A stretch of DNA of 63,267 bases, the filler included, from Olpidium bornovanus S191 (Eukaryota; Fungi; Olpidiomycota), in assembly GCA_017911155.1 (NCBI GenBank). It is 32 parts of 32 records of this genome, joined end to end, with 100 filler letters (N's around TTAATTAATTAA, not from the genome) between each part and the next. Parts side by side here need not be neighbours in the genome. Positions count along the whole stretch, not along the records: positions 30,830 to 32,151 come from JAEFCI010005971.1; positions 32,252 to 34,676 come from JAEFCI010008454.1; 30 more parts are not named here. One strand, 5' to 3'. How positions within the stretch are numbered: position 1 is the first letter of the stretch; the number at the start of each line of letters is the position of its first letter. Below are positions 32,119-34,814 of the stretch, in pieces. Both the position numbers and the translations under genes were made by a program. The notes below the pieces were generated by a model, which ran no database searches, was not told where the DNA came from, and saw only the letters and a program-made list of their open reading frames with translations.

Positions 32119-32473
32119 TTGTTTGTTTTTTTTTTTTTTTTTTTGATCAAANNNNNNNNNNNNNNNNNNNNNNNNNNNNNNNNNNNNNNNNNNNNTTAAT
32201 TAATTAANNNNNNNNNNNNNNNNNNNNNNNNNNNNNNNNNNNNNNNNNNNNCATGAGTCCCCGGAAGAATTGAGCTCCCGTCGGGCCCAGGTGAAGTGCC
32301 TTAGACTTCAGCTGCTGCGGGGCCAGGAGCAGTGCGCCGTCACGGCAAGTCAAACCGGATCGCGCGGGAACTCGTAAGAACATTGGCCGACTTTGTGAGA
32401 GGATGGAAGAATTGAATGTGCAGTGTCAACGAAGACCCGGGCGAAGCCCGGTGAGAGTGTTGCGCATCAAAAG

Positions 32474-32546
32474 TGGGCCGACCGAGGGTCAAACTCAGGA
32501 CCTTTCCCTACCCGGAGGGATGCTCTACCCATTACGCTATCCGCCC
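32474..32546 (-). tRNA. tRNA-derived sequence inside the TRIM 3' LTR (probably not a functional tRNA; isotype unresolved)
   Basis: GGGCGGA TA GCGT AATGGGTA GAGC A TCCCT CCGGGTA GGGAA AGGTC CTGAG TTTGACC CTCGG TCGGCCC A. This 73-nt cloverleaf has 6/7 acceptor pairs and an intact T stem, but C56>T in the B box and a non-canonical anticodon loop. Confidence 0.8.
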
Positions 32547-32706
32547 TTCGCACCAGGTGTCTGGCTCGCCCGGCAAAGCCATACCAACGCCCCCACTCAA
32601 GCCAGGCACCTTAGGCACCACTTGTCAATGGGGCTCGACCACCCACCCAACCACAATCGGAGGGACCAAGTCACGATTAAACTCATAACCTGTTGCGCAT
32701 CAAAAG

Positions 32707-32778
32707 TGGGTTGACCAATGGTCAAACTCGGGACCTTCCCCTACCCAGAGGGATGCTCTACCATTGAGCTATCCGCCT
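32707..32778 (-). tRNA. tRNA-derived sequence inside the TRIM 5' LTR (probably not a functional tRNA)
   Basis: AGGCGGA TA GCTC AATGGTA GAGC A TCCCT CTGGGTA GGGGA AGGTC CCGAG TTTGACC ATTGG TCAACCC A. The A box/D arm (TAGCTCAATGGTAGAGC) is canonical; the acceptor and T stems are eroded. Confidence 0.8.
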
Positions 32779-33572
32779 TTCGCAGCAGGTGTCTGGCTCG
32801 CCCGGCAAAGCCATTCCAACAGAGAGATGCAGTGTCCCCAGAATGATTTGGGTGGAGGGTCAAACAAGCGCGTAACAAAAAGGACATCGAAGCGCGCGCA
32901 CACCATTGCGTTATGCCGAAGGTCAAAATTTTTGCGATAAAGCAAATGATTTTTTTTTCCGTCGTCCTGGACGTCTCGCTCTCGCGGCGAAACATTTCAC
33001 GGGATGAGGCTGATCTTTGGTGTCTTTGATCATCTCTGCTCGACGTTACGCGCGCAAATCGTTGAATTACAGATGACAGATCTCCGAACGCAACTGAAGG
33101 ACGTCGAGTGCAAACTGTTGGAGTCGCGTTAACAGCTGGCGGAGTCGCATTCTGAACTTGCCAAGTCCCAGTTTCAGCTCCAAAAAAACCAAAATCCAGC
33201 TTGATGAGTTGACGCTGCATCAGAACAAGGTGACGGCCGAGCTGAAGAAACAAACTCCCTGTGCCCGCGAGGAGACGTGGTGCTCCAAGGAACACCTGCG
33301 TGAGGCCGAAGAGAGATCCGGGCGATCGAACAAGCACTCAGAGAAAAGGAAATGGAAGCGCACGCGCACAAATGCGTCGTGCCTGAGGTCAGAATTTTAT
33401 TTGCGACAAAGCGGGCGTTTGTTTTTCGGCCACACCTGGACGTCTCTCTCCCGCGGCGAGGACGCCTTGCTTTCGCCGGCGAAATCCTACAATTTAACGG
33501 GATGAGGCTGATTCTTTTGGGGTGTTTGACGGTGTGCGCGCGCAGAGCATTAAATCACAGATGAAGGATCTC

Positions 33573-33690
33573 TGGTGGGGGCCGCCCCGCAAGACACCGA
33601 GTTCCCATGGCGAGCCATAGCTAGAGATAGACCAACGCCCTTACGGGCGCTCCGCCCAGGTTCCACACACCCCCTTCTTCGCCCCCAACA
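33573..33690. mobile_element. 118-bp solo-LTR-like insertion in an exon
   Basis: Termini are TGGTGGGGG...CCCCCAACA (1 mismatch), flanked by TCTC direct repeats (33569-33572, 33691-33694). Removing the insertion restores ATG AAG GAT CTC CGT GCA, which matches the paralogous exon start GAT CTC CGA ACG. Confidence 0.8.
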
Positions 33691-34814
33691 TCTCCGTGCA
33701 CGACTAAACGACACCGAAAACGAGCTGGCGGGGTCCCAATTTGAGCTGGTGCAGTGCCTGCCTCAGCTGAAAAAAAGCGAAGCCCAGCTCAATGAATTAC
33801 GGCAGCAGCTCGTCGAGAAGGAGACGCAGATTTCAGAGGCGGAGTCCCGAGCCCGCCACCGCGCACGAACAGTGCCAATCTTTTGTCGAGGACCAGCAGC
33901 GGCCGCGAGGCATGCACGAACAGTGCCGATCTCTTGCCGAGGGCCAGCAGCGGCTGCGAGACATGGTCGCCGAGCGCAACGCGCTCTTGCAGAGGGTATC
34001 CCGGCACCTGGACAAAATATTTGATTCCTCCGGCATTTTCCCGACCCGGCCGCTGCGACACTGGCCGAAAATCCGGAGTCTAAGAGCCTATTCGGCGAGA
34101 ACTTTAAAGACTTCAGCGAAAGCATGATGTCGCGGCTTGAGGGGGTTGTGTCAGCTCGAGGCAAATTTTGTGAACAGGGGGCAGGCATTGAGGAACACCT
34201 GCTTTGAGCAGCTTGAGTAGGTTAAACTGTCCGTAGTGTACCGTAGTTTGGCGCAAATTACCGCTTGTCTGAGCTTCGTCTCGAAACATCCTCAAAGATC
34301 ACCTCACCGCCAGCTTCACATCCGCGGCGAGCAGATTGAGCCGATCTTGAGGAAGGTGACAGATATCCAAGCGCGCGTCGAAAGGGTCGACCACTTAAAC
34401 AACTATGTCCAGTGCGTTTCCCTCCTAGTCGCTTTTTGATTTACTTTTGCACGTTCGGCGTACGAAAGTGGGAAGGTTTTCTGGGCGACGGCGGGTTACT
34501 ACCTGCTAACATTCGTATTGCTCTGTGCACATCGCATTGCCCAAAATCAGCTTCTTGGAGCCGCAAGTGGACAAGCGAAACAATAAAGCAGCTCGACGAC
34601 TCCATCGATGCGGGCGGCCCAGTTGCCCTGCCGCCAGAGTCCGAAATCCTGCTCCATATACACGTCTCGGAGCATGNNNNNNNNNNNNNNNNNNNNNNNN
34701 NNNNNNNNNNNNNNNNNNNNTTAATTAATTAANNNNNNNNNNNNNNNNNNNNNNNNNNNNNNNNNNNNNNNNNNNNCATGATTTAGCAGGTTTGGCAGCT
34801 GACCAAGTTTGTCT

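What the first reader, a model, noticed from the sequence alone, without database searches (positions are those of the whole stretch)
32453..32826. Intact miniature LTR retroelement (TRIM) whose LTRs each carry a tRNA-derived RNA polymerase III promoter
Seen in sequence: two ~131-bp direct repeats with TGTTG...CAACA termini, a perfect 5-bp TSD (GAGAG), a PBS directly after one LTR, a PPT directly before the other, and only 101 bp between them. Each LTR holds a 72-73-nt tRNA cloverleaf in the same orientation as the element, with an A box, a B box carrying C56>T in both copies, and CTTTT just downstream. Established: the PBS GGTTATGAG is complementary to the anticodon arm of fungal tRNAiMet, the half-tRNA priming used by Ty5 and Drosophila copia, so the helper would be a copia. 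Plant Cassandra TRIMs carry 5S rRNA in their LTRs. As I recall, tRNA-bearing TRIMs were recently named Helenus/TRIMp3, so the class may not be new, but this family and host lineage could be. Inference: this is a SINE/LTR hybrid transcribed by Pol III and mobilised in trans. It sits 7 nt into an intron (GTGAGAG|), and the divergence between its two LTRs suggests an old insertion.
Basis: partly seen in the sequence, partly recalled or inferred. Interest (0 to 1): 0.9.

Follow-up and report, generated by a model that had tools for sequence, protein, structure and literature searches.

The report
Old tRNA-bearing miniature LTR retrotransposon (Helenus)

Summary
On the minus strand, 32458-32821 is a 364-bp TRIM. 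Its two LTRs are 131 and 132 nt long and 90% identical. It has TGTTG...CAACA ends and a perfect 5-bp duplication (GAGAG). A primer-binding site (GGTTATGAG) abuts the 5' LTR, a purine tract (GAGTGGGGG) abuts the 3' LTR, and the interior is 101 nt. Each LTR holds a sense-oriented tRNA-like sequence that passes Rfam's tRNA threshold (32.3 and 31.7 bits, cut-off 29). Each has an A box, a B box with T at position 56, and TTTT two bases downstream.

This is the published architecture of fungal Helenus (TRIMp3, Kojima 2024). Fifty published internal portions contain the same GGTTATGAG, and those read begin with it. Several consensus LTRs carry the same B-box T. One rust family shares the TGTTGGAATG...CAACA ends. 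No published family shares the LTR body, so this is a new family of a known kind.

Not shown: Pol III transcription, copy number (one RNA contig hints at a second copy) and the host species. This copy is old and decayed, and probably immobile.

The parts
32453..32457 (.). Target-site duplication GAGAG, on the 3' side in element orientation
   Evidence: Read directly. Identical to 32822-32826.
32458..32589 (-). 3' LTR, 132 nt (CGTTGG...GCAACA)
   Evidence: Repeat families D1 and D2. Alignments.
32474..32546 (-). tRNA-like sequence in the 3' LTR. It is degenerate: the D stem is weakened and the anticodon loop has 6 nt.
   Evidence: Rfam RF00005, 32.3 bits against a gathering score of 29. ARAGORN calls it only at -ps80.
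32469..32472 (-). TTTT run 2 nt after the tRNA-like end. Inferred to be the Pol III terminator and the R/U5 boundary.
   Evidence: The role is an inference.
32590..32598 (-). Polypurine tract GAGTGGGGG, directly upstream of the 3' LTR
   Evidence: Published Helenus internal portions end in ...ggggg in the same way.
32590..32690 (-). Internal region, 101 nt. It contains the PBS and the PPT and is too short to encode a protein.
32679..32690 (-). Primer-binding site GGTTATGAGTTT (core GGTTATGAG at 32682-32690), directly after the 5' LTR
   Evidence: The same 9 nt occurs 50 times in the published Helenus sequence file, and every passage read shows it as the first bases of an internal portion (ggttatgagccc...). 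The paper assigns this PBS type to the tRNA-iMet anticodon loop.
32691..32821 (-). 5' LTR, 131 nt (TGTTGGAATGG...GCGCAACA)
   Evidence: Helenus-15_PHor has the same ends, tgttggaatg...caaca.
32707..32778 (-). tRNA-like sequence in the 5' LTR. It forms a cloverleaf with anticodon GGG.
   Evidence: Rfam RF00005, 31.7 bits against a gathering score of 29. ARAGORN at -ps80 calls tRNA-Pro(GGG).
32761..32771 (-). A box TAGCTCAATGG
   Evidence: The same string is present in published Helenus LTRs.
32720..32729 (-). B-box region GAGTTTGACC, with T in place of the conserved C56. The same string lies in the 3' LTR at 32487-32496.
   Evidence: gggtttga also occurs in several published Helenus consensus LTRs.
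32702..32705 (-). TTTT run 2 nt after the tRNA-like end in the 5' LTR
32822..32826 (.). Target-site duplication GAGAG, on the 5' side in element orientation

Best explanation
The stretch 32458-32821, on the minus strand, is one structurally complete but old copy of a Helenus-type TRIM. [quoted passage not shown]

Inferred life cycle:
1. Pol III starts at about tRNA position +1 in the 5' LTR.
2. It reads through the weak T4 run there, then through the PBS, the 101-nt interior and the PPT.
3. It stops at the same T4 run in the 3' LTR. This gives U3 of about 43 nt, R as the tRNA-like part plus T4, and U5 of about 11 nt.
4. A copia-superfamily element supplies reverse transcriptase and integrase in trans.
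5. Reverse transcription is primed by the anticodon-loop half of tRNA-iMet on GGTTATGAG, and integration makes a 5-bp duplication.

Shown here: the anatomy and the match to the published family architecture.
Inferred: Pol III use, the copia helper and the U3/R/U5 boundaries.

This copy is probably dead. Its LTRs have diverged by 10%. Its PBS is shortened from the usual GAGCCC to GAGTTT. The first base of the 3' LTR has mutated. It now sits antisense inside a spliced transcript of the host locus.
For: - Repeats, duplication, ends, PBS and PPT.
- tRNA model above the gathering score in both LTRs, in the same orientation as the element.
- The only T4 runs on the sense strand are the two directly after the tRNA-like parts.
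- Kojima 2024 defines Helenus as a TRIM with a tRNA-like sequence in its LTRs. For fungal families it reports 5-bp duplications, a dominant tRNA-iMet anticodon-loop PBS, copia dependence and lengths of 311-1263 bp.
- The paper's sequence file holds ggttatgag 50 times; the internal portions read begin with ggttatgagccc and end in ggggg. LTRs start tgttg. The order is tRNA-like part, T run, short tail.
- Helenus-15_PHor shares tgttggaatg...caaca.
- The gggtttga form of the B box occurs in several published consensus LTRs.
- One X1 contig joins GGGCTCATAACA to the LTR edge at 32458. That is an LTR followed by the PBS TGTTATGAGCCC, so it comes from another copy.
Against: - No transcript start, strand or Pol III evidence was obtained. 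The raw RNA runs gave 0 reads.
- C56 of the B box is T and position 52 is A, so promoter strength is uncertain. This is from general knowledge of tRNA promoters.
- A T4 run right after the tRNA-like part would end a share of Pol III transcripts before the PBS.
- Copy number is unknown. Only one indirect sign of a second copy was seen.
- No match was found in metagenome or viral contigs, or among predicted proteins.
- The tRNA-like parts show no excess folding stability.
- The 12 LTR and interior strings tried (8-14 nt) either do not occur in the published file or occur only as the shared end (tgttggaatg) or in an unrelated internal portion (gggtaggg). Direct kinship with published families is therefore unproven.
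Confidence: 0.85

Rival explanations
1. The structure is a TRIM, but the tRNA-like part is a passenger, for example a SINE or tRNA fragment once captured in the LTR. The family would then be transcribed by Pol II from U3, like ordinary TRIMs.
For: The B box departs from GGTTC at the critical C56 in both LTRs. A T4 run sits directly after the tRNA-like part and would stop Pol III early. The only RNA seen is read-through from the host gene. Kojima himself says Pol III use by Helenus is not validated.
Against: The order tRNA-like part, T run, short tail, LTR end recurs in every published LTR sequence read here, taken from different fungal genera and one lycophyte. Several multi-copy consensus LTRs carry the same T56. 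Only about 43 nt lie upstream of the tRNA-like part, which leaves little room for a Pol II promoter.
Confidence: 0.2
2. This is a one-off internal deletion of an autonomous copia element that has the same LTRs. It would not belong to a self-propagating miniature family.
For: Only one full copy could be examined. The second LTR-PBS junction seen in RNA could belong to an autonomous element.
Against: The dimensions (131 / 101 / 364 bp) match published short Helenus families such as Helenus-4_PTrit at 130 / 95 / 355 bp. The interior keeps exactly the PBS and the PPT. The duplication flanks the short form, so it integrated as a short element. Kojima argues that autonomous partners are unlikely to share Pol III-type LTRs.
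Confidence: 0.07
3. This is a local tandem duplication of a tRNA pseudogene, or two independent tRNA-SINE insertions, and not an LTR element.
For: There are two tRNA-like sequences 233 bp apart in the same orientation.
Against: The repeats end exactly at TG...CA ends. A single 5-bp duplication brackets the pair, and neither repeat has one of its own. A PBS and a PPT abut the inner repeat edges.
Confidence: 0.02

Closest known systems
Fungal Helenus families (TRIMp3) of Pucciniales, e.g. Helenus-4_PTrit, Helenus-5B_PCor, Helenus-2_PPol, Helenus-15_PHor (Kojima 2024, PMC10886601)
   Same: Both are TRIMs with a sense tRNA-like sequence in each LTR. Both have a 5-bp duplication, an interior that starts GGTTATGAG and ends in a G-rich PPT, and TGTTG... 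LTR starts. Both have a T run and a tail of about 10-15 nt after the tRNA-like part. Sizes are similar (LTR 110-130 nt, interior 91-130 nt). By eye, the string ATAGCTCAATGG(T)TAGAGCATCCC is shared with Helenus-2_PPol, and a GTTTGAC B box is shared with several families.
   Different: The LTR body and the interior share no 8-14-mer with the published file beyond the shared end and one chance 8-mer. The element is GC-rich (57.5%), whereas the rust consensus sequences read looked AT-rich by eye. The PBS is GAGTTT instead of GAGCCC. The anticodon is GGG. The host is unidentified.
Helenus of Agaricomycetes (Helenus-1_CCin, Helenus-1_AmAr) and of Selaginella
   Same: A tRNA-like sequence in the LTR, a 5-bp duplication and TGTTG ends.
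   Different: Their PBS starts TGGTAGCA or TGGTATCG, so they use a different primer site on the tRNA. [quoted passage not shown] Their LTRs are longer (209-269 nt) in the Agaricomycetes.
Cassandra (plants) and Ajax (nemerteans)
   Same: Both are TRIMs with a small-RNA-derived Pol III promoter in the LTRs. Cassandra is the one lineage with experimental support.
   Different: The promoter derives from 5S rRNA, not from a tRNA.
Ty5 (yeast) and copia (Drosophila)
   Same: Priming from the anticodon-loop half of tRNA-iMet (cited). The 5-bp duplication is from general knowledge.
   Different: Those are autonomous elements of about 5 kb, transcribed by Pol II.
tRNA-derived SINEs (SINE2)
   Same: A tRNA-derived internal promoter, small size and non-autonomy.
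   Different: SINEs are mobilised by LINEs. They have no LTRs, PBS or PPT.

Membership tests
Helenus (TRIM with tRNA-derived LTR sequence; Kojima 2024) | TRIM structure: two LTRs around a short non-coding interior | tested here: met
   LTRs of 131 and 132 nt at 90% identity, with a 101-nt interior.
Helenus (TRIM with tRNA-derived LTR sequence; Kojima 2024) | tRNA-derived sequence inside each LTR | tested here: met
   Rfam RF00005 at 32.3 and 31.7 bits against a gathering score of 29. Both hits span the full model and lie in sense orientation.
Helenus (TRIM with tRNA-derived LTR sequence; Kojima 2024) | PBS next to the 5' LTR and PPT next to the 3' LTR | tested here: met
   GGTTATGAG at 32682-32690 and GAGTGGGGG at 32590-32598. 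The same PBS start occurs 50 times in the published sequence file, at the start of the internal portions read.
Helenus (TRIM with tRNA-derived LTR sequence; Kojima 2024) | 5-bp target-site duplication (fungal and plant families) | tested here: met
   GAGAG on both sides. Table S1 lists 5 bp for all fungal families.
Helenus (TRIM with tRNA-derived LTR sequence; Kojima 2024) | Conserved box A (TRGCY...YGG) and box B (GGTTC) | tested here: inconclusive
   Box A TAGCTCAATGG is met in the 5' LTR. Box B reads AGTTT instead of GGTTC. The T56 variant gggtttga is present in several published consensus LTRs.
Helenus (TRIM with tRNA-derived LTR sequence; Kojima 2024) | Interspersed multi-copy family, with solo LTRs and copies that each have their own duplication | tested here: inconclusive
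   The host genome was not available. One RNA contig shows the LTR edge joined to a different PBS, TGTTATGAGCCC. Metagenome, viral-contig and protein searches were blank.
TRIMp3 (TRIM transcribed by Pol III) | Transcription from the internal Pol III promoter | not testable with these tools
   The raw RNA runs gave 0 reads, and contigs show neither strand nor starts. This is also unvalidated for every published Helenus family.
Functional tRNA gene | Stable cloverleaf, a standard anticodon loop and a standard isotype | tested here: not met
   ARAGORN finds nothing at default settings. Only at an 80% threshold does it call Pro(GGG), and the other copy has a 6-nt loop. Minimum-free-energy folds are not cloverleaves, with z-scores of 0.67 and -1.05.

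The most novel reading that the evidence does not exclude
The host may lie outside the lineages where Helenus has been reported (Pucciniales and three Agaricomycetes among fungi). The locus is GC-rich, unlike the rust consensus sequences read. If so, this would be a new Helenus family that still shares the integrase-recognised ends (TGTTGGAATG...CAACA) and the tRNA-iMet half-primer site with rust families. That would point either to a much older origin of the copia-Helenus partnership in fungi or to horizontal transfer of the pair.
Probability: 0.2. Interest if true: 0.5.

Novelty: new member of a known kind. Interest (0 to 1): 0.3.

Why it matters
Helenus elements inflate tRNA gene counts. 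In Puccinia triticina, 481 of the 492 predicted tRNA-Thr-AGT genes lie in Helenus copies. Recognising this pair of tRNA-like hits as LTR parts prevents false tRNA annotation. A family in a new host lineage would widen the known range of Pol III-promoter TRIMs and of anticodon-loop priming. The copy also shows a TE being taken into a host transcript, with a cryptic 80-nt intron that nearly coincides with the antisense tRNA-like part. As a single decayed copy of a class described in 2024, its wider importance is modest.

Tried and rejected
Host identification failed.
- Four exact look-ups of ORFs from this piece found no encoding contig.
- An exhaustive phmmer search with the 111-aa exon ORF gave one weak hit (E 3.5e-4) to a repetitive 1122-aa newt protein. 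I take it as coiled-coil noise.
- Pfam gave only sub-threshold coiled-coil families.
- Two protein-atlas searches gave nothing usable.
- Run and organism names were coded.

Other copies could not be found directly.
- A 76-aa translation across the LTR and interior had no protein candidates.
- Exact scans for a 25-mer from the LTR 5' part (U3) and for the LTR-end-plus-PBS pattern found nothing in metagenome contigs.
- Scans for two other LTR strings (19 and 21 nt) found nothing in viral contigs.

Expression could not be tested.
- Raw RNA runs X14, X17 and X23 gave 0 reads from about 6% of each run, which is no test.

No empty site was found.
- No paralogous empty site for the TRIM exists in the duplicated units of the host locus.

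Other points.
- The 118-bp insertion at 33573-33690 is not related to the TRIM. Its alignment scores fall within the range of shuffled sequences.
- A full-text search for GGTTATGAG found only unrelated primer sequences.
- Rejected: a functional tRNA gene, a tandem tRNA locus, and placement inside a removed intron.

Full report
OBSERVATION

The piece 32252-34676 contains two direct repeats, at 32458-32589 (132 nt) and 32691-32821 (131 nt). A global alignment gives 118 identities in 131 aligned positions, with 9 transitions, 4 transversions and one 1-nt indel. The K2P distance is 0.108. GAGAG flanks the pair on both sides, at 32453-32457 and 32822-32826.

In minus-strand orientation the right-hand repeat reads TGTTGGAATGG...GCGCAACA. 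It is followed at once by GGTTATGAGTTT (32679-32690). The left-hand repeat is preceded at once by GAGTGGGGG (32590-32598), and it now begins CGTTGG, which is one change from TGTTGG. Exactly 101 nt lie between the repeats.

tRNA-LIKE PARTS

Rfam's tRNA model matches both LTRs on the minus strand over the full model. The hits are 32474-32546 at 32.3 bits and 32707-32778 at 31.7 bits, both above the curated gathering score of 29.

These are not working tRNAs.
- ARAGORN finds nothing at default settings.
- Only at an 80% threshold does it draw a cloverleaf with anticodon GGG in the 5' LTR copy. It gives a 6-nt anticodon loop in the other copy.
- Minimum-free-energy folds are not cloverleaves and are no more stable than shuffled sequences.

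The promoter motifs are as follows.
- The A box is TAGCTCAATGG.
- The B-box region is GAGTTTGACC in both copies. T replaces the conserved C56, a TCG-to-TTG change.
- CTTTTG follows each tRNA-like end.
- These two T4 runs are the only runs of four or more T on the sense strand of the element.

After insertion the tRNA-like part changed at least as fast as the rest of the LTR: 10 of the 14 differences lie in it. This copy has therefore decayed neutrally.

WHAT IT IS

Kojima (2024, PMC10886601) defined Helenus as TRIMs with a tRNA-like sequence in their LTRs. He grouped them with Cassandra and Ajax as TRIMp3. The paper reports the following for fungal Helenus.
- They make 5-bp duplications.
- They are thought to depend on copia elements.
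- Helenus families as a whole are 311-1263 bp long.

The paper's sequence file gives a direct comparison.
- 'ggttatgag' occurs 50 times, and every passage read shows it as the first bases of an internal portion (ggttatgagccc...).
- Those internal portions end in ...ggggg.
- LTRs start tgttg.
- The tRNA-like part is followed by a T run and a short tail.

Further points of agreement:
- Helenus-15_PHor shares the ends tgttggaatg...caaca with this element.
- The T56 form of the B box (gggtttga) occurs in several published consensus LTRs, for example Helenus-2_PPol, Helenus-5_PCor, Helenus-12_PTrit and Helenus-2_PHor. It therefore does not disqualify the element.
- The dimensions here (131 / 101 / 364 bp) match the short rust families, for example Helenus-4_PTrit at 130 / 95 / 355 bp.

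On the other hand, twelve strings of 8-14 nt from the LTR body and interior were tried. Ten are absent from the published file. The other two occur once each: the shared end tgttggaatg, and gggtaggg inside an unrelated internal portion. This is therefore not one of the published families.

MECHANISM (INFERRED)

By analogy with Cassandra and with the Helenus proposal, the cycle would run as follows.
1. Pol III starts at about tRNA position +1 in the 5' LTR.
2. It reads through the weak T4 run there.
3. It ends at the T4 run in the 3' LTR. That gives a U3 of about 43 nt, an R made of the tRNA-like part plus the T run, and a U5 of about 11 nt.
4. A copia element supplies the proteins.
5. A tRNA-iMet half primes on GGTTATGAG.
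6. Integration duplicates 5 bp.

None of these steps was tested. Pol III use is unvalidated even for the published families.

OTHER COPIES

The host genome was not available to any tool. The only sign of another copy comes from run X1. One contig matches the LTR from 32458 onward but is preceded by GGGCTCATAACA. In element orientation this is an LTR end followed by TGTTATGAGCCC, a fuller tRNA-iMet-type PBS. Scans of metagenome and viral contigs and a protein search across the LTR were blank.

CONTEXT

Run X1 is RNA. One 1491-nt contig removes four GT..AG introns on the plus strand: 32920-33070, 33386-33543, 34217-34297 and 34412-34550. Depth is zero in the depth bins that lie wholly inside them (three of the four introns).

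Other X1 contigs cover 32252-32490, 32461-32705, 32676-32815 and 32786-32919 without a difference. Their depth is about 8.7, against 10.7 for the exons. The element is therefore retained, antisense, in the host transcript. A minor spliced form cannot be excluded from contigs alone.

One contig skips 32706-32785 (GT..AG). This is a cryptic intron that nearly coincides with the antisense tRNA-like part of the right LTR.

The spliced transcript has stop codons in all three frames, with or without the element. It has no Pfam domain beyond coiled-coil noise and no credible homologue among 1.84 billion representative proteins. The locus looks like a transcribed, decayed, internally duplicated coiled-coil gene.

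HOST AND AGE

The host could not be named. A fungal host is plausible on three grounds, but it is not shown.
- The PBS type and LTR ends are shared with rust Helenus.
- The introns are short (81-158 nt), and one has a CTAAC branch-site motif.
- The DNA-run contig sets are only about 50 Mb.

If the neutral rate is 1e-9 to 1e-8 per site per year (my assumption), a K2P of 0.108 puts the insertion at roughly 5-50 million years ago.

VERDICT

This is a real, well-described, structurally complete Helenus-type TRIM. It is a new family of a kind published in 2024. It is present here as one old and probably immobile copy. Interest is modest unless the host lies outside the known range.

Noticed in passing
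window 33573-33690: A second small insertion of 117-118 bp lies inside an expressed exon. It is flanked by ATCTC on both sides, at 33568-33572 and 33690-33694. The duplicated unit upstream has the uninterrupted site (...GATCTC|CGAACG..., about 33083). On the minus strand the insertion starts TGTTGG and ends CCACCA. It has no tRNA hit and no similarity to the TRIM beyond chance. It may be a solo LTR of another family.
   Followed up: partly
window 32706-32785: One RNA contig of run X1 skips exactly these 80 nt (GT..AG on the plus strand, depth 3.7 against about 12). This is a cryptic intron that nearly coincides with the antisense tRNA-like part of the right LTR. The matching site in the left LTR has no AG (gcac instead of gcag).
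   Followed up: partly
window 32252-34676: The host locus is transcribed and spliced at four confirmed GT..AG introns, yet it has stop codons in every frame. It consists of diverged tandem units of exon plus intron (about 32880-33090 against 33325-33572). It is either a transcribed pseudogene or a non-coding host gene.
   Followed up: partly
window 32966-33014 and 33435-33512: Blocks inside the two paralogous introns are 92-95% identical (repeat families D6 and D7), while an exon pair is 71% identical (D3). A weak Rfam H/ACA snoRNA hit lies at 33443-33504 on the minus strand (24.1 bits against a gathering score of 45). This is unexplained and may be chance.
   Followed up: no
window 33863-33964: Two tandem copies of a 51-bp unit, 88% identical, lie inside the large exon.
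   Followed up: no
window 32458-32821: The CpG observed/expected ratio is 0.66 in the element and 1.03 in the whole piece. Five of the nine transitions between the LTRs are at CpG sites, and the B-box change is TCG to TTG. This suggests CpG-targeted deamination of repeats in this host.
   Followed up: partly
window 32458 (loose end in run X1): A contig carries GGGCTCATAACA directly before the LTR edge. This is another element copy, and its PBS (TGTTATGAGCCC) keeps the GAGCCC that this copy has lost.
   Followed up: no
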